Assembly (NCBI RefSeq): GCF_002113885.1
Contig: NW_018408548.1
Coordinates: 428,000-491,999, forward strand
Length of the DNA stretch: 64,000 nt
Direction of reading: 5' to 3'
Origin: Mizuhopecten yessoensis
Lineage: Eukaryota
The notes below the pieces were generated by a model. The model had not been told where the DNA came from. It saw only the letters and a program-made list of their open reading frames with translations, and made no database searches. How positions within the stretch are numbered: position 1 is the first letter of the stretch; each line of letters starts with the position of its first letter. Both the position numbers and the translations under genes were made by a program. This document shows positions 38,355-55,265 of the stretch, in pieces.

Positions 38355-40586
38355 TTAAGATTCAATCTGCACTTCGGAATGTTCATCGGACGCTCCATAC
38401 ACAACGTGTCGGTTTGGAATTAGATAATCCGATTGTTGGCGGAGATATTCGGACGTGGGACGGCGCCATTTCCAGACTTTCGTGCCAACGAGTAACACAA
38501 ACGCCATGAACGCAATCGTTGCGACTATTGCGATAGCGGCTACTGCCCCATGTGACAAAACGCCGTCGTTGGTTTCTACACCGCTGTCAGCGGTATGTCT
38601 GGCTGTTTCGAAGCCATTGCGACTTTCGACAACATCGGTCCATGTCAAACCGTCCTCGCTGATCATGACACTTGAATTATCCGAAAATCCAGTAATGGGA
38701 ATCTCCATAAAAGGAGGTCGTACGATTGTCGGCAGTCCTTCACCGCTCAAAGCGTTTGCCTTGATACAGTAGGATATTTCGCATCCATTGGCAACCACAG
38801 CCATATGCTCGCTGTAACCGGTCGGGCAGCCTCTTGGCCAATGAGAAGGCCCAGCACTTTTCAGGAAAGTTTCCAGAACGAACATGTCAGTGTTACTACG
38901 TCTGTGTCTATCTTCTTCGTCTGACGTCAGCTTCAGAGGATTGCCAATTTTACAACTGAAGAATCCCGCGAAAGGCACAGAGTAACGGTAGCCAAGTTCG
39001 TAATCATCACTGACGCAAACTCGCAAGCTACTACTGACTTTCAACGCGTAGAAGTATGGAGGACAGTAACGGCCACGCGTCAAAGGATTTCCTATGGTGC
39101 TTGTGTACAGTCCACCAAACAGGAAGCCAGAGTCGGCCGAGACTTTGCCTGTAGCTACACACCAAAATCCTGTGTATGACGCTGTTTGGGAGGCCGCGTA
39201 ATCTCCACAACATGTTGACCACCCTAGAAATCCACAGCTATGGCATCGACGTACTGTATTTGGCGTACGCTTCCTTCCTTTGTCGACGAGTACTTCCTCA
39301 TAGTTGGCGGGACAAGAGTATTCACCTGTCAAAGGATTCAACTGTCGGAGATCAGCACAAGTGTCAGACCGGATATTTCCTGACATGGAGCATTTCTGGT
39401 ACACTCCACCAAACGTGTAGTTGTTCGAAAGACTGTGACAACTTCCGTCGTCGACGTTGGCTTGGAAACTAAAATTGGGGGAGTCAGCATTGGTACATCC
39501 CTTGTAAATGTTATGTTTGTAGTACAAATTAATGGCGTCTCTTACATGCATGATAAGGTCGTAGACTACAGACGACGGTAACTCCGGTAGGCCCATTGGA
39601 GTGATGACGAAGTGCAGTGGATCTCCCGCTCGATCGACGGCCACTAAATTCTCTGCGACGCTTTCGGCCCAGTCATTCAGACTAAAGTTCTGTGGTTGGA
39701 ACACTGACCCACCAATGGTATCTGTTTCAGAATGTGTTCTGTTACCAAGATACTGGTCGATCATTTCATTCGACGTCGAGTGTTTGTAGCCTGTCTTGAT
39801 ACTAAAAACACTGCCGAATGAAGCACTTGCGGAGGCCAGGACTTTACTCTTGTCCATGCTGTACGAACGAGCATATGTGGTTTTTATCTCGTCTTGTTGG
39901 ACAAGCGCTGCCCCGGCATCTACACTGGTGATAACGTGGGTGCCGAAGTCCCTGACAAGAAGCTGGCTCTCGTAACGGGCCATGTTTGTTTCGTTTTTTG
40001 CTATCAGTGCTGCAATTGTCAGCAACCTTGTTTTGAATTTCGGATTAAAAGTCGTGTCGGGTTGCAGTTTGGCAGAATATCGAACATACCTCATTTGAAC
40101 TCTGGTGGTTATGGATTTGTCCATCATTTGTCGAGAACGAACACTTTCCGTCTCATGCGAATAGGACCCTCCGATGCCAAAATGTCCAATATGGAAACCA
40201 GCCTCAGCGTTGACCGTGCTAGATGTTGTAGACGTGTAATTCTGCCAATGTGTAAACAGCTCGGCGAATGTTTCCAGTTTGCTTTGCTTTAAAGGCACAG
40301 TGTAGATTCCGTCTGGTAACAAATAGTGTCCATCGTCTGTAGTTTGACAAAGACTGTAGTTATAATAGATCACTTGACCGCCATGTCTGTTTCGTAAGTT
40401 GTCCCATCCGCCTCCTGGCAGTACTTCATAACGTATAACGTTTTTGTTCAAGCTTCTCTGCAGACACCTTTGTGGATCGCCAACGCTATACATAGCCGAA
40501 GATGCGTTGTCGACATCAGACGAGGAGCTTATGACGACGATTATACGCAGAGTTACATACACAAGTATGGGGTAGATGTACCCCAT
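38355..40586 (-). CDS. MPEG1: Macrophage-expressed gene 1 / perforin-2 (MACPF-EGF-P2-TM), copy 1, 743 aa, intronless
   Basis: Signal peptide; EVLPGGGWDNLRN; MACPF signature FGTHVITSVDAGA; GCT..SPNF.FQANVDDGSC; P2 FGGVYQ.C..NPLTG.YSCP; YSVPFAGFFSC..GNPL; TM GAVAAIAIVATIAFMAFVLLVG; short tail. Confidence 0.96.
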   Translation of the reverse strand: MGYIYPILVYVTLRIIVVISSSSDVDNASSAMYSVGDPQRCLQRSLNKNVIRYEVLPGGGWDNLRNRHGGQVIYYNYSLCQTTDDGHYLLPDGIYTVPLKQSKLETFAELFTHWQNYTSTTSSTVNAEAGFHIGHFGIGGSYSHETESVRSRQMMDKSITTRVQMRYVRYSAKLQPDTTFNPKFKTRLLTIAALIAKNETNMARYESQLLVRDFGTHVITSVDAGAALVQQDEIKTTYARSYSMDKSKVLASASASFGSVFSIKTGYKHSTSNEMIDQYLGNRTHSETDTIGGSVFQPQNFSLNDWAESVAENLVAVDRAGDPLHFVITPMGLPELPSSVVYDLIMHVRDAINLYYKHNIYKGCTNADSPNFSFQANVDDGSCHSLSNNYTFGGVYQKCSMSGNIRSDTCADLRQLNPLTGEYSCPANYEEVLVDKGRKRTPNTVRRCHSCGFLGWSTCCGDYAASQTASYTGFWCVATGKVSADSGFLFGGLYTSTIGNPLTRGRYCPPYFYALKVSSSLRVCVSDDYELGYRYSVPFAGFFSCKIGNPLKLTSDEEDRHRRSNTDMFVLETFLKSAGPSHWPRGCPTGYSEHMAVVANGCEISYCIKANALSGEGLPTIVRPPFMEIPITGFSDNSSVMISEDGLTWTDVVESRNGFETARHTADSGVETNDGVLSHGAVAAIAIVATIAFMAFVLLVGTKVWKWRRPTSEYLRQQSDYLIPNRHVVYGASDEHSEVQIES

Positions 40587-40640
40587 GTTTGCTGGTTGAT
40601 AGCGGCGTTCCCACTGCCGCTTACGGGAAACTTTTCTTCC

Positions 40641-52500: not shown

Positions 52501-55265
52501 TTCAGAACAAACATGTTAGTGTTACTACGTCTGTGTTTAACCTCTTCGTCTGACGTCAGCTTCAGAGGATTTCCAGTTCTACAACTGAAGAATCCCGCGA
52601 AAGGCACAGAGTAACGGAAGCCAAGTTCGTAATCATCACTGACGCAAACTCGCAAGCTACTACTGACTTTCAAAGCGTAGAAGTACGGAGGACAGATTCG
52701 GCCACCCGTCAATGGATTTCCGATGGTGCTTGTGTACAGTCCACCAAACAGATAGCCGGTGTTGGCCGATACTTTACCTTTAGATACACACCAATATCCT
52801 AAGTATAACGCTGTTTGGGAAGCCGCGTAATCTTTACAACATGTTGACAACCAAAGAAATCCACAGTCATGGCATCGATTTACTGTATTTGGCGTACGTT
52901 TAATCCCTTTGTCAATCATAACCGCCTCATAGTTCGCAGGACAAGAGTATTCACCTGTCAAAAGATTCAACTGTCGGAGATCAGCACACGTGTCAGACTT
53001 CATGTTTTCTGATATGAAGCATTTTTGATACACTCCGCCAAACGTGTAGTTGTTCGAGAAGCTCTGACAACTTCCGTCCTCAACGTTGGCTTGGAAACTG
53101 AAATTGGGTGAGTCGTAATTGGTACATCCCTTGTAAATGTTATGTTTGTAGTACAAATTAATGGCGTTTTTTACATGTATGATAAGTTCGTTGATTACAG
53201 ACGAGGGTAACTCTGGTAAGGCCATTCGAGTGATAACGAAGTGCAGTGGATCTCCAGCTCGGTCGACGGCCACTAAATTCTCTGCGACGCTTTCGGCCCA
53301 GTCACTCAGACTAAAGTTCTGTGGTTGGAACACTGACCCACCAATGGTATCTGTTTCAGAATGTGTTCTGTTACTAAGATACTGGTCAATCATTTCATTC
53401 GACGTCGAATGGCTGTTGCCAGTTTTGATACGAAAAACACTTTCGAATGAAGCACTTGCGGAGACAAGGACCTTACTCATGTCCATGCTGTACGAACGAG
53501 CATATGTGGTTTTTATCTGGTCTTGTTGGACAAGCACAGCCCCGGCATCTACACTGGTGATGACGTGAGTGCCGAAGTCCCGAACAAGAAGCTGGCTCTC
53601 GTAACGGGCCATGTCTGTTTCGTTTTTTGCTATCAGTGTTGAAATTGTCAACAACCTCGCCTTGAATTTCGGATTAAAGGCCGTGTCTGGTTGAAGTTTA
53701 GCAGAATATCGAACATACCTCATTTGAACCTTTGTGGTCACGGATTCATCCATCATTTGTCGAGAACGAACACTTCCCGTCTCATGCGAGAAGGACCCTC
53801 CGATGCCAAAATGTTCAATATGGAAGCCAGCCTCAGCGTTGATCGTGTTTGATGTTGTGGACGTGTAGTTCTGCCAATGTGTAATTAGCTCGGCAAATGT
53901 TTCCAGTAGCTTTTCTTTAATGGTACAGTGTAGATTCCGTTTGGTAACAAATATTGTCCATCGTCTGTAGTTTGACAAAGACTTTAGTTATAATATATCA
54001 CTTGACTCCCATGTTTGTTTCGTAAATTGTCCCATCCGCCTCCTGGTAGTACTTCATAACGTAGTAAGTTTTTATTCAAGATTTTCTGCATACATCTTTG
54101 AGGGTCGCCAACGCTGTACACAAACTGAGCCGTAGAGCCGCTGTCCACATCAGACGAGGAGCTAAGGACATGATATGTCATCAGTGTTGCAAAAATAAGT
54201 ATGACAGAGTGAGGTTCCATGTTTGTTCGTCGAATGTTCTTGTCAAACTGCTGTTAACTTGGAACGCTAACTCTCTCTCATATCGTATAACCCTTTATAC
54301 TTTCTGTGTCCGGGTTTTCCAAATTCTTTGAAACCTACAGACATTTCGTCAAACTACCACAGTACCCGTTCTTGAAACGTGGGCAGAACTGGAAATACCT
54401 ACTTTTAGTTTTTGAGAAATGAGTCCTTCAAGCTAGTGACATTGTGATATTATTGTATTGTACGTTAAAGGATTTACCTATAAATTCATCACTAAGATTG
54501 TAACGACAAAAGACACCTACGGGTGATTAGTACAAGCAATGTTGTCAATGCAGGTCCAATAAACTGCTGGTTAGGTCATTGCTGAAAAAAAAAAAAAAAG
54601 GTCATTGCTGAAATGTGTAATATATAGTAAAAAGATGATTTTTATTCACATAAGTGTACGTGATAACATAGTTTGGATTAAATTTCCTGCAAATTCATGA
54701 TAGACTAACGCAAAATATTCAAAGATAAAGTACGTGAGTTGTAAACGCGAGGAGTGCTGTGGGACGTGGGACCCTAATTTTCTGAGGAATTCTTGTGAAG
54801 AATTATAAATAGTTTATCTAGATGCATGATCAGGTGTCATCAAATAATAAAACAAATATGACAGAAAACTTCTATAAAAATCAGAACTATGTGAAGGCAA
54901 TATATACAAACTGTGTGGGAAAAGAAACAAAAATATTATTAATCGATATTAAGACATAAAAAGTGTTTACTTTGGCTTACAAAGTCGTCATCCGGTCATC
55001 GTGGGATCCCCAGTTGTCTTTATTAATAGAAAGTGTGGTTTGCGTATCGATGGAGCTTGTACGACTGTCCTTGATATTTTTCTTGGTAATATATTGGAGA
55101 ATGTCAGACTGAAAATTTCCAAATTAATTCCTAACAATAATCATTCCCTGTAACGCTAAATATAGACTATGCCTTTCCCTTAATATCTACGTCTTATGTA
55201 AAATACAAATAATGTTCACGCGATACTTGAATTAGTGAACGATGCCTAACGCGAATTCACTAAAA
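49530..55265. repeat. Segmental tandem duplication unit B (contains Mpeg1 copy 3)
   Basis: Co-linear with 42645-48690. Confidence 0.9.
52017..54220 (-). pseudogene. MPEG1: Mpeg1 / perforin-2 copy 3, disrupted
   Basis: Relative to copy 2: TAC>TAA at 53986-53984 (codon 79), a 1-nt deletion at ~53908 (plus-strand TTTG>TAG), and CAG>TAG four codons before the ancestral stop. The remaining ~630 codons are open. Confidence 0.88.

What the first reader, a model, noticed from the sequence alone, without database searches (positions are those of the whole stretch)
38355..54220. Tandem perforin-2 (Mpeg1) array evolving by birth-and-death with mosaic gene conversion
Seen: copies 2 and 3 share kilobases of flanks and the juxtamembrane stalk, while copy 1 flanks are not alignable beyond core promoter motifs. 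Yet copies 1 and 2 are almost identical, including silent sites, over ~38745-39065 vs ~45538-45858 and the CHSCGFLG..ADSG region. Elsewhere 1 and 3 pair against 2 (YSVGDP, IYTVP, LIAKNET, QKC..SDTCADLRQLN..GEYSCPANYE), then 2 and 3 pair against 1 (AVMIDKGIK). Inference: patchwork conversion homogenises and shuffles the pore-forming ectodomain while signal peptide, stalk, TM, tail and promoter diverge. The pseudogene could serve as a sequence donor for diversifying an innate immune effector.
Basis: partly seen in the sequence, partly recalled or inferred. Interest (0 to 1): 0.75.

Follow-up and report, generated by a model that had tools for sequence, protein, structure and literature searches.

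The report
Scallop perforin-2 genes swapping sequence patches
Three neighbouring copies of a scallop immune pore-forming gene (perforin-2/Mpeg1), one of them broken, have repeatedly copied stretches of coding sequence into one another, which is a well-known way for gene families to evolve but had not been described for this gene.

Summary
The minus strand carries three intronless MACPF/Mpeg1 genes: c1 (38355-40586), c2 (45145-47385) and c3 (52017-54220). c3 is broken.

c2 and c3 lie in duplicated units of about 6 kb, with flank K of 0.22-0.28. The flanks of c1 are no more like theirs than shuffled DNA. Even so, the c1 coding sequence is as close to c2 (dS 0.26) as c3 is (dS 0.28).

Along the coding sequence the nearest relative changes in blocks:
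- c2≈c3 at alignment columns 380-586 and 1286-1341.
- c1~c3 at about 587-1285.
- c1≈c2 at 1324-1835.

Permutation tests give p<1e-5. Rooted segment trees give (c2,c3) 98/94 in one segment and (c1,c3) 98/94 in the next, so one tree with a fast c3 does not fit.

Contigs from three other studies reproduce c3, and one bridges a junction. The junctions lie where c1 and c2 share no 31-mer, so an assembler path switch cannot have made them. The c1≈c2 tract was not re-checked with reads.

Best reading: ordinary interlocus gene conversion in a birth-and-death array. The idea that the pseudogene acts as donor is untested, because the direction of transfer is unknown.

By-products: c3's lesions differ between individuals, and two public protein models of this locus are artefacts.

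The scan had already noted conversion between PPP1R15 paralogs elsewhere in this genome.

The parts
38355..40586 (-). c1: intact intronless Mpeg1/perforin-2 gene, 743 aa
   Evidence: ORF. Pfam MACPF, E 1.3e-20. Residues 45-650 align to solved MPEG1 chain 6u23, E 1e-150.
45145..47385 (-). c2: intact intronless Mpeg1/perforin-2 gene, 746 aa
   Evidence: ORF. Pfam MACPF, E 4.8e-21.
52017..54220 (-). c3: broken Mpeg1 copy (pseudogene)
   Evidence: Aligns end to end with c1/c2. Lesions seen. It has 50 private amino-acid changes against 15 in c1 and 5 in c2.
53983..53985 (-). c3 lesion 1: in-frame TAA, polymorphic
   Evidence: The stop is present in the window and in runs X1 and X11. Haplotig L008 and run X2 have a sense codon. 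That is 3 of 5 sources with the stop and 2 of 5 without.
53906..53909 (-). c3 lesion 2: this codon is broken in every source, in two forms
   Evidence: The window and X1 are one base short, which shifts the frame. X2 and X11 carry one more base, which reads as an in-frame stop. X11 also lacks 4 bases at 54131.
42643..48718 (-). c2 duplication unit (gene plus flanks)
   Evidence: Aligns with 49529-55300. Flank K is 0.22 on the 3' side and 0.28 on the 5' side.
49529..55300 (-). c3 duplication unit (gene plus flanks)
38758..39269 (-). c1 side of the c1≈c2 tract (alignment columns 1324-1835; P2/MABP and C-terminal L region)
   Evidence: 16 differences in 512 bp between c1 and c2, against 46 from each to c3. 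dS(c1,c2) is 0.03-0.06 in the windows over columns 1366-1815. Silent-site scan p=0.006.
45551..46062 (-). c2 side of the c1≈c2 tract
   Evidence: Same calls (15, 32, 56). In c2 the tract is flanked on both sides by c3-like sequence.
46800..47006 (-). c2 side of the c2≈c3 tract (columns 380-586, MACPF domain)
   Evidence: 5 differences in 207 bp between c2 and c3, against 20 and 23 from c1. dS(c2,c3) is 0.06, against flank K of 0.22-0.28.
53636..53842 (-). c3 side of the c2≈c3 tract (columns 380-586)
52881..52936 (-). c3 side of the c2=c3 tract (columns 1286-1341, AVMIDKGIK)
   Evidence: 0 differences in 56 bp between c2 and c3, and 12 from c1. A run of 12 concordant sites, p=2e-4.
52937..53023 (-). 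c3 side of the sharpest c1~c3 block (columns 1199-1285)
   Evidence: 12 consecutive sites with c3=c1 are followed by 12 with c3=c2, inside a stretch where c1 and c2 share no 31-mer. The X2 contig 52881-53304 bridges the junction.
39308..40006 (-). c1 side of the wider c1~c3 region (columns 587-1285)
   Evidence: Scan statistic p≈0.02. Rooted tree of residues 196-428 gives (c1,c3) 98/94. Shared derived residues at alignment columns 218, 417 and 446.
40643..40671 (-). c1 core promoter motifs (TATAAA at -62, ACAGGAAG at -85)
   Evidence: c2 has the same two motifs at 47438-47451. c3 has them at 54294-54307 with ACAGAAAG.

Best explanation
These are three tandem, intronless Mpeg1/perforin-2 genes of a scallop. 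The exact c1 and c2 proteins sit in a cluster with NCBI records named Mizuhopecten yessoensis.

An older duplication gave c1. A later duplication of a roughly 6-kb unit gave c2 and c3. c3 then lost its reading frame.

Since then, ectopic recombination between the misaligned neighbours has copied patches of coding sequence from one copy into another, in all three pairings. This is interlocus gene conversion, or short double exchanges.
- A recent patch of about 0.5 kb joins c1 and c2 in the membrane-binding P2/MABP region.
- Recent patches join c2 and c3 in the MACPF domain and in a 56-bp stretch.
- An older, patchier exchange joins c1 and c3 in between.

Exchange needs homology. It is therefore confined to the selectively conserved middle of the coding region, while the signal peptide, stalk/TM/tail and the c1 flanks drift apart.

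Shown: the mosaic, its significance, the flank contrast, and the reality of c3's sequence and lesions in other individuals.

Inferred: the mechanism, the order of events, and that c1 and c2 are functional pore formers.
For: - Identity: Pfam MACPF in all three copies. There is a full-ectodomain match to solved MPEG1 structures. The nearest proteins are scallop Mpeg1.
- Mosaic: runs and 3SEQ-like tests (c3 as child, maximum descent 20 against 5.5, 0 of 20,000 permutations; c2 as child, p=0.0018). Core runs are 28 against 49.7±4.9.
- Silent sites: dS(c1,c2) is 0.03-0.06 over columns 1366-1815. dS(c2,c3) is 0.06 at columns 391-615 and 1291-1440, but 0.66-0.75 at columns 1066-1290. Scan statistics give p of 0.006, about 0.02 and ≤0.01.
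- Rooted evidence against 7 other scallop proteins. Strict shared derived residues are 6 for (c2,c3), 4 for (c1,c3) and 3 for (c1,c2), and they lie in blocks. For residues 40-195 the tree is (c2,c3) 98/94, and AU rejects the alternatives at p=0.015 and 0.0095. For residues 196-428 it is (c1,c3) 98/94, and AU rejects the alternatives at p=0.029.
- Flank contrast: K(c2,c3) in flanks is 0.22-0.28, while c1 flanks equal the shuffled control. Yet dS(c1,c2) is 0.26 against dS(c2,c3) of 0.28.
- Not an artefact. c3 is reproduced at ≥99% identity in most pieces from 3 DNA runs of 3 studies. The X2 piece 52881-53304 bridges the 52936/52937 junction. Haplotig L006 covers the junction near 53635. The allegiance flips lie inside stretches with no 31-mer shared by c1 and c2. 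The c1≈c2 tract keeps 16 differences, so it is not a collapsed copy.
Against: - The segment boundaries for the trees were chosen after seeing the site patterns, so the AU p-values are optimistic.
- The (c1,c2) segment tree is weak (83/77) and the alternatives are not rejected (p=0.23).
- Strict no-mismatch run tests are not significant for c1-c2 (p=0.26 and 0.24) and are borderline for c1-c3 (p=0.04 and 0.06).
- In the c1~c3 block the two copies still differ at 10 of 87 bases and c1 has no private change. That event is therefore old or composite, and small numbers limit any dating.
- c1 and c2 were not re-examined in independent reads.
- A second tandem pair on another contig (dS 0.33) also has homology limited to the coding sequence. 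The flank contrast alone is therefore weaker evidence than it looks, unless that pair is converted too.
Confidence: 0.85

Rival explanations
1. The pseudogene is the donor. c3 is kept as a reservoir, and its variants are copied into the expressed c1 and c2, diversifying the effector. It is a special case of the best explanation, not an alternative to exchange as such.
For: c3 takes part in two of the three pairings. c1 and c3 share derived residues that c2 and all 7 other scallop proteins lack, at alignment columns 417 and 446. c1 has almost no private changes in columns 601-1300. That would fit c1 being a recent recipient from both neighbours.
Against: Every tract is equally explained by transfer from an intact copy into c3. 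The sequence shared by c2 and c3 at columns 391-615 evolved under purifying selection relative to c1 (dN/dS about 0.16-0.2). c3's private changes have omega 0.29 in the core but about 0.8 at the ends. That is as expected if the core of c3 is refreshed from intact copies, or if it died recently. c3's allelic variants do not reveal a polymorphic tract. There is no evidence that c3 is maintained by selection.
Confidence: 0.12
2. Assembly chimera. The short-read assembler threaded paralogous reads into the wrong copy, so the mosaic is not in the animal.
For: The genome is in 82,659 contigs. c1 and c2 share identical runs of up to 144 bp. The submitter's own gene model jumps from c2 to c1 inside that identical run. 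c1 and c2 were not re-checked with reads.
Against: Contigs of three other studies reproduce c3, including one junction. A second haplotype contig, L006, matches c3 at 376 of 377 bases across another junction. The allegiance flips at columns 583/587 and 1285/1287 lie where c1 and c2 share no 31-mer, so no graph path can switch there. The near-identical tracts retain scattered differences.
Confidence: 0.05
3. There was no exchange. One tree, (c1,(c2,c3)), holds everywhere, and the blocks come from local rate differences, selection and homoplasy.
For: The whole-domain trees both give (c1,(c2,c3)). c3 evolves faster. Constraint varies along the protein.
Against: Silent-site distances vary tenfold in blocks. 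Shared derived residues support three different pairs, in blocks. A model-based rooted tree gives (c1,c3) 98/94 for residues 196-428 and rejects (c2,c3). The permutation tests condition on variable sites only.
Confidence: 0.04
4. c1 arose by a duplication of the coding sequence only (a retrocopy or a small segmental copy). Its lack of flank homology would then need no later homogenisation.
For: Homology ends within 5 bases of the ATG and at the stop codon. The gene has no introns.
Against: c1 has its own TATA box and the same ACAGGAAG motif upstream, and promoter sequence is not carried by an mRNA copy. No similarity to the c2/c3 3' flanks was found, and the only downstream hit was one marginal 38-base match. 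dS rises to 0.45-0.8 towards both coding ends rather than stopping abruptly. This model does not explain the c1~c3 and c2≈c3 blocks.
Confidence: 0.06

Closest known systems
MPEG1/perforin-2 of vertebrates (solved structures 6u23, 6sb3)
   Same: MACPF domain followed by the EGF-like, P2/MABP and C-terminal L/CTT regions. c1 residues 45-650 align to chain residues 20-605 with E 1e-150. The domain order is taken from passages of PMC6753088 and PMC9418332. A hydrophobic stretch and a short tail follow the ectodomain (by inspection).
   Different: Here there are three tandem copies rather than one. There is also an insert in the L region relative to the mammalian chain (alignment). No activity was tested.
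Zebrafish mpeg1 paralogues (three, one thought to be a pseudogene)
   Same: A small lineage-specific Mpeg1 family with one dead member (passage of the review PMC7593815).
   Different: The passages I read do not mention sequence exchange between the fish copies. 'conversion' occurs 0 times in that review's main text.
Concerted evolution of tandem duplicates by interlocus gene conversion (textbook cases such as globin and hsp70 duplicates; recalled, not from a call)
   Same: Coding regions are homogenised in patches while flanks diverge. Tract ends coincide with loss of homology. Different segments support different pairings.
   Different: None in kind. This is a new gene family and animal for the phenomenon. 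The same scan reported conversion between PPP1R15 paralogues elsewhere in this genome (s1-514833; not checked by me).
Pseudogene-templated diversification, e.g. chicken immunoglobulin pseudo-V donors (recalled, not from a call)
   Same: A broken copy lies beside expressed copies and shares sequence patches with them.
   Different: The defining one-way transfer from pseudogene to expressed gene is not shown here. There is only one candidate donor, no sign of somatic events, and no excess of replacement changes.

Membership tests
MPEG1/perforin-2 (MACPF superfamily) | MACPF domain | tested here: met
   PF01823 above the gathering score in c1, c2 and the long c3 ORF: 74.9, 76.3 and 78.1 bits against a cutoff of 21.5.
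MPEG1/perforin-2 (MACPF superfamily) | MPEG1-specific ectodomain after the MACPF domain (EGF-like, P2/MABP, L/CTT) | tested here: met
   c1 residues 45-650 align to 6u23 (E 9.8e-151). c1 residues 363-649 align to the MABP+L fragment 6sb1 (E 1e-61).
MPEG1/perforin-2 (MACPF superfamily) | Signal peptide, single C-terminal transmembrane helix and short cytosolic tail | tested here: inconclusive
   Hydrophobic N-terminus and a hydrophobic stretch (GAVAAIAIVATIAFMAFVLLVG in c1) are seen by eye in the alignment. No predictor was run.
MPEG1/perforin-2 (MACPF superfamily) | Forms pores and kills bacteria | not testable with these tools
   Needs recombinant protein.
Interlocus gene conversion / concerted evolution | Different segments of the paralogues support different relationships | tested here: met
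Interlocus gene conversion / concerted evolution | Silent divergence in tracts is well below that of neutral flanks or of the rest of the gene | tested here: met
   dS is 0.03-0.06 in tracts against flank K of 0.22-0.28 for c2-c3 and saturated c1 flanks.
Interlocus gene conversion / concerted evolution | Transfer is non-reciprocal, with an identified donor and recipient | not testable with these tools
   Needs population haplotypes or outgroup DNA. My attempts were uninformative.
Interlocus gene conversion / concerted evolution | The mosaic exists in the organism, not only in one assembly | tested here: inconclusive
   Met for c3: 3 runs of 3 studies, 1 of 3 bridging the sharpest junction by the tool's 31-letter rule, plus haplotig L006. 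For c1 and c2 there is only the k-mer argument.
Birth-and-death gene family | Lineage-specific duplicates plus a pseudogene | tested here: met
   The three copies form one clade against other scallops in both halves and in the ends-only tree (97/92). c3 is broken in 4 of 4 sources that cover lesion 2.
Pseudogene-templated diversification | One-way transfer from the pseudogene into expressed genes | tested here: inconclusive
   The direction could not be determined.

The most novel reading that the evidence does not exclude
The broken copy c3 is not just decaying. It serves as a standing template whose variants are repeatedly copied into the two expressed perforin-2 genes, chiefly in the MACPF to EGF/P2 region. 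An invertebrate would then diversify an innate pore-forming effector by pseudogene-templated conversion, in the germline and conceivably in somatic cells. The different lesions found in different individuals would be tolerated because only lesion-free patches are transferred.
Probability: 0.1. Interest if true: 0.7.

Novelty: new member of a known kind. Interest (0 to 1): 0.38.

Why it matters
Mpeg1/perforin-2 is among the oldest animal pore-forming immune effectors and is often multiplied in invertebrates (abstract of PMC10781884). How its copies evolve has been treated as simple duplication.

Four consequences follow from what is shown here.
- In a scallop the copies are not independent lineages. 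Gene trees, orthology calls and dN/dS scans for this family will mislead unless they are done by segment.
- The exchange has a practical effect on databases. One public protein record of this locus is a c2/c1 hybrid made across the identical tract. Another hides c3's lesions behind invented exons.
- Protein comparisons hint at the same process in Pecten and Argopecten.
- If exchange shuffles the membrane-binding P2/MABP region between copies, it bears on how target range evolves. That remains to be tested.

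Tried and rejected

2. I proposed that c1 is the orthologue of the 'MG..' copies of other scallops, which would make the c1 split older than the scallop radiation. The ends-only tree rejects that grouping (AU p=0.004). It puts the three window copies in one clade (97/92). I dropped the idea.

3. The strict Sawyer-type longest-identical-run test was significant only for c2-c3 (p=2e-4). 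It was not significant for c1-c2 (p=0.26; silent sites 0.24) and borderline for c1-c3 (0.037; silent sites 0.056). Mismatch-tolerant scans were then used.

4. Direction of transfer.
- c3's allelic variants mostly restore the state shared by c1 and c2, as expected for young private mutations.
- Branch omega values are ambiguous, because c3-odd sites in the c1≈c2 tract mix two lineages.

5. Expression of c3.
- The raw-read RNA run X23 laid 0 reads with no positive control, so it is no test.
- Runs X18 and X20 (on record as RNA) and X15-X17 and X19 (guessed to be RNA) hold 0.16-0.36 of the sampled words, while only 10.3% of the stretch's 31-mers are shared with c1/c2. This is a weak hint of transcription and nothing more.

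6. A search for further c1 or c2 haplotype contigs in the genome found none. Only two c3 haplotigs turned up.

7. Neighbouring long ORFs gave no Pfam family above its cutoff.

8. Literature.
- 'Mpeg1' with 'gene conversion' found 2 papers. Neither title nor abstract start concerns Mpeg1 evolution, and I did not open them.
- 'MPEG1' with 'concerted evolution' found 0.
- 'macrophage expressed gene 1' with 'scallop' found 0.
- The broader searches found no paper on exchange between Mpeg1 copies.
- In PMC10781884 the words tandem, conversion, pseudogene and concerted each occur 0 times in the main text.
Table S1 of PMC13090629, which lists the scallop MACPF sequences used, could not be seen. That paper's Table 1 counts 4 MPEG1 genes in M. 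yessoensis, whereas I find 5 loci including c3.

Full report
WHAT IS THERE. The window is G000:C5221:428000-491999 of a 988-Mb genome in 82,659 contigs. Three long ORFs lie head to tail on the minus strand: c1 at 38355-40586 (743 aa), c2 at 45145-47385 (746 aa), and a 653-aa ORF at 52017-53978. All three carry a Pfam MACPF domain above the curated cutoff.

Read from ATG 54220, the third copy (c3) aligns with c1 and c2 from start to stop. It has an in-frame TAA at 53983-53985 and is one base short at about 53906-53909.

c1 residues 45-650 align with solved MPEG1/perforin-2 chains (6u23, E 9.8e-151). Residues 363-649 align with the MABP+L fragment 6sb1. The domain order is MACPF, EGF-like, P2/MABP, L/CTT, then the membrane anchor. 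I take this order from passages of PMC6753088 and PMC9418332.

The nearest database proteins are scallop Mpeg1s. The exact c1 and c2 sequences sit in one 90% cluster with an NCBI record named Mizuhopecten yessoensis, on a contig of 1,086,985 bp. The genome holds only these three close copies. It also holds a distant tandem pair on another contig (43-45% identity to c1) and two small contigs that are second-haplotype pieces of c3, at 99.7% and 99.3% identity.

FLANKS. Self-comparison shows that c2 and c3 lie in duplicated units, 42643-48718 and 49529-55300.
- With gaps excluded, the c2 and c3 flanks are 81% (3') and 77% (5') identical, giving K of 0.22 and 0.28.
- The profile is patchy, with K from 0.07 to 0.9 per 200 bp.
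- c1 matches the others only from its stop codon to 5 bases beyond its ATG.
- A sensitive search of 1.5 kb upstream and 2.6 kb downstream of c1 found nothing but one marginal 38-base hit.
- Forced alignments of c1 and c2 flanks are 44-48% identical, like the shuffled control at 44.7%.
- Only a TATAAA box and an ACAGGAAG motif recur upstream of all three. In c3 the motif reads ACAGAAAG.

THE MOSAIC. The three-way coding alignment has 2,250 columns and 394 variable ungapped sites. Of these, c3 is the odd one at 174, c1 at 130, c2 at 66, and all three differ at 24. The classes are not mixed at random.
- There are 188 runs against 231.8±8.8 expected, with 0 of 20,000 permutations as low.
- A 3SEQ-like walk with c3 as child of c1 and c2 has a maximum descent of 20 against 5.5 (0 of 20,000 permutations). 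With c2 as child, p=0.0018.
- In the core (columns 160-1835) I took only the sites that tell c1 from c2 and where c3 sides with one of them. These 99 sites form 28 runs against 49.7±4.9 (0 of 100,000 permutations). The longest run of c3=c1 sites is 13 (p=2e-5).
- The sharpest junction is at columns 1285/1287. Twelve consecutive sites with c3=c1 are followed by twelve with c3=c2.

Differences per tract:

| Columns | Length | c1-c2 | c1-c3 | c2-c3 |
|---|---|---|---|---|
| 380-586 | 207 bp | 20 | 23 | 5 |
| 587-915 | 329 bp | 21 | 23 | 34 |
| 1199-1285 | 87 bp | 12 | 10 | 22 |
| 1286-1341 | 56 bp | 12 | 12 | 0 |
| 1324-1835 | 512 bp | 16 | 46 | 46 |

SILENT SITES. Overall dS is 0.26 for c1-c2, 0.35 for c1-c3 and 0.28 for c2-c3. 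In 50-codon windows:
- dS(c1,c2) is 0.03-0.06 over columns 1366-1815.
- dS(c2,c3) is 0.06 at columns 391-615 and 1291-1440, but 0.66-0.75 at columns 1066-1290.
- All pairs reach 0.45-0.8 at both coding ends.

A scan statistic on silent sites gives p=0.006 for the c1-c2 low-divergence window. On all variable sites it gives about 0.02 for c1-c3 (columns 587-1285) and ≤0.01 for c2-c3 (columns 1287-1323).

A strict no-mismatch run test is significant only for c2-c3 (p=2e-4). For c1-c2 it is not (p=0.26; silent sites 0.24).

No window has dN above dS.

ROOTING. I therefore used seven other scallop proteins. c3 was read through with X at its two breaks.

Strict shared derived residues are those where the odd copy agrees with at least 4 outgroups and no outgroup has the shared state. 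Their counts and alignment columns:
- (c2,c3): 6, at columns 61, 120, 166, 176, 452 and 660.
- (c1,c3): 4, at columns 218, 417, 446 and 716.
- (c1,c2): 3, at columns 69, 493 and 552.

They lie in blocks that match the DNA tracts.

Rooted ML trees by segment:
- Residues 40-195: (c2,c3) 98/94. AU rejects (c1,c2) at p=0.015 and (c1,c3) at p=0.0095.
- Residues 196-428: (c1,c3) 98/94. AU rejects both alternatives at p=0.029.
- Residues 448-612: (c1,c2) 83/77. The alternatives are not rejected (p=0.23).

The boundaries were chosen after seeing the patterns, so these p-values are optimistic. The permutation tests above do not share that flaw.

IS IT AN ASSEMBLY ARTEFACT? Three arguments say no for c3 and for the junctions.

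(i) I laid 4 of the 23 runs listed on 51500-55300. Three were sets of DNA contigs from three different studies, and one was an RNA run of raw reads. I left the 2016 runs out as the possible source of the assembly.
- The three DNA runs cover c3. 23 of 28, 26 of 27 and 26 of 33 laid pieces are at ≥99% identity.
- The X2 piece 52881-53304 has one difference and bridges the 52936/52937 junction with 56 and 368 letters on either side.
- The listed pieces of X1 and X11 fall short of the tool's 31-letter rule there.
- So 1 of 3 runs bridges the junction among the pieces shown; 64 further pieces were not shown.

(ii) The second-haplotype contig L006 (53330-53706, 376 of 377 identical) spans the junction near 53635.

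(iii) A path switch in an assembly graph needs a word shared by the two copies. c1 and c2 share no 31-mer across columns 396-711 or 1199-1323, yet c3's allegiance flips inside both stretches. In addition, the near-identical tracts keep scattered differences, so they are not one sequence used twice.

What remains unchecked is the c1≈c2 tract in independent reads.

THE PSEUDOGENE.
- Lesion 1, the TAA at 53983-53985, is present in the window, X1 and X11. In haplotig L008 and run X2 the codon is a sense codon. That is 3 of 5 sources with the stop.
- Lesion 2 is broken in all four sources that cover it, in two forms. The window and X1 are one base short. X2 and X11 carry one more base, which reads as an in-frame stop.
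- X11 also lacks 4 bases at 54131.
- Contigs drop rare variants, so heterozygosity is not excluded.
- c3 has 50 strict private amino-acid changes, against 15 in c1 and 5 in c2.
- Its private changes have omega 0.38 overall: 0.29 in the core and about 0.8 at both ends. c1 and c2 show 0.05-0.33 at the ends.

This fits a fairly recent death, or a core refreshed from intact copies. The measure mixes lineages inside the c1≈c2 tract, so I draw no firm conclusion from it.

Transcription of c3 is open. The RNA run laid no read and had no positive control. Two runs on record as RNA and four guessed to be RNA hold 0.16-0.36 of the sampled words, while only 10.3% of the stretch's 31-mers are shared with c1/c2.

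MECHANISM AND HISTORY (inferred).
- In both halves of the protein and in an ends-only tree, the three copies form one clade against other scallops (100/99, 96/97 and 97/92). My idea that c1 is orthologous to one copy of other scallops was rejected (AU p=0.004). The duplications are therefore specific to this lineage, or the ends were homogenised earlier.
- The order is c1 first, then the c2/c3 unit duplication at K of about 0.2-0.3, then the loss of c3's frame.
- c2's c1-like patch is bracketed by c3-like sequence and c3-like flanks on both sides. That is the mark of conversion or a short double exchange, not of a single unequal crossover.
- The c1≈c2 and c2≈c3 patches are recent (0-3% divergence). 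The c1~c3 exchange is older or composite (about 11% in the sharpest block).
- The direction of every event is unknown.

COMPARISON AND NOVELTY. Patchy homogenisation of tandem duplicates with diverged flanks is textbook concerted evolution (recalled, not from a call). A small Mpeg1 family with one dead member is known from zebrafish (passage of PMC7593815).

I found nothing in print on sequence exchange between Mpeg1 copies.
- Searches found no such paper.
- In PMC10781884, whose abstract reports 'intensive duplication' in invertebrates, the words tandem, conversion, pseudogene and concerted each occur 0 times in the main text.
- Supplements were closed.

I file this as a new member of a known kind.

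WIDER HINTS. Pecten maximus and Argopecten irradians each have two copies. I looked for quartet sites, meaning columns where two of the four proteins share one residue and the other two share another.
- 15 such sites pair the copies by species. These lie mostly at alignment columns 52-503.
- 17 pair them by orthology. These lie mostly at columns 425-769.
- 7 pair them the third way.
- The positions of the first two classes differ (Mann-Whitney p=0.0012).
- In the MACPF half the tree pairs the copies by species (89/84 and 86/85), and AU rejects orthologue pairs at p≈0.027.
- In the P2/L half orthologue pairs are best (71/92 and 70/82), but species pairs are not rejected.

This suggests the same process in other scallops, but does not show it.

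The second tandem pair of this genome (L004/L005) is 78.5% identical in protein, with dS 0.33. Its homology is also confined to the coding sequence.

VERDICT. This is an ordinary mechanism in a gene family where it had not been described, and it has practical consequences for database records.

Noticed in passing
window 38355-47385 (P0001 = OWF42792.1) and 52017-54220 (P0009 = XP_021369317.1): Two public protein models of this locus are artefacts. P0001 is c2 residues 1-617 joined to the last 181 residues of c1; 53 residues are common to both. The jump lies inside the identical c1/c2 stretch. P0009 is 65 residues from invented upstream exons plus 648 of the 653 residues of c3's long ORF, which hides the lesions.
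   Followed up: yes
L004 and L005 (G000:C5589, about 157-169 kb): There is a second tandem Mpeg1 pair, 43-45% identical to c1. The two are 78.5% identical to each other, with dS 0.33 (windows 0.16-0.74). Their DNA homology also ends at the coding sequence. They may be homogenised too.
   Followed up: partly
window 44086-44510 and 51102-51524: A dispersed MITE-like repeat. The genome search returned 48 matches, including the query itself and the c3-flank copy; the rest are 67-89% identical, and those longer than 100 bases are at most 82%. It sits at the same place in the c2 and c3 3' flanks. The two copies are 91% alike, much closer than the neighbouring flank. Exchange may therefore reach into the flanks.
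   Followed up: partly
window 40643-40671, 47438-47451, 54294-54307: A TATAAA box with an ETS-like ACAGGAAG motif just upstream is the only thing shared by all three promoters. In c3 the GGAA core reads GAAA. The link to an ETS factor is recalled, not tested.
   Followed up: partly
L008 (G000:C80721) bases 1-58 = window 53939-53996: The last 58 bases of this c3 haplotig differ from the window at 4 sites. At 3 of them the haplotig carries the base that c1 has; at one of the three, c2 has it too. It could be a polymorphic c1-to-c3 patch or a chimeric contig end.
   Followed up: partly
proteins P0003/P0004 (Pecten maximus) and P0005/P0008 (Argopecten irradians): The two copies pair by species in the MACPF half and by orthology in the P2/L half. 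This suggests concerted evolution of Mpeg1 duplicates in other scallops.
   Followed up: partly
window 12717-14135 (+) and 18700-20166 (+): Two long ORFs (472 and 488 aa) have no Pfam match. The second holds a 36-bp tandem repeat of 11.4 copies at 19462-19870.
   Followed up: no
window 22042-22322: A perfect 28-bp tandem repeat, 10 copies, 100% matches.
   Followed up: no
c1 residues about 553-580 (window about 38850-38930): Relative to the mammalian MPEG1 chain, the scallop proteins carry an insert in the L region with a dibasic motif: DRHRRS in c1, DRHKRS in c2 and VKHRRS in c3. Another first-reader note (s1-565718) calls it a furin-type site. It was not examined here.
   Followed up: no
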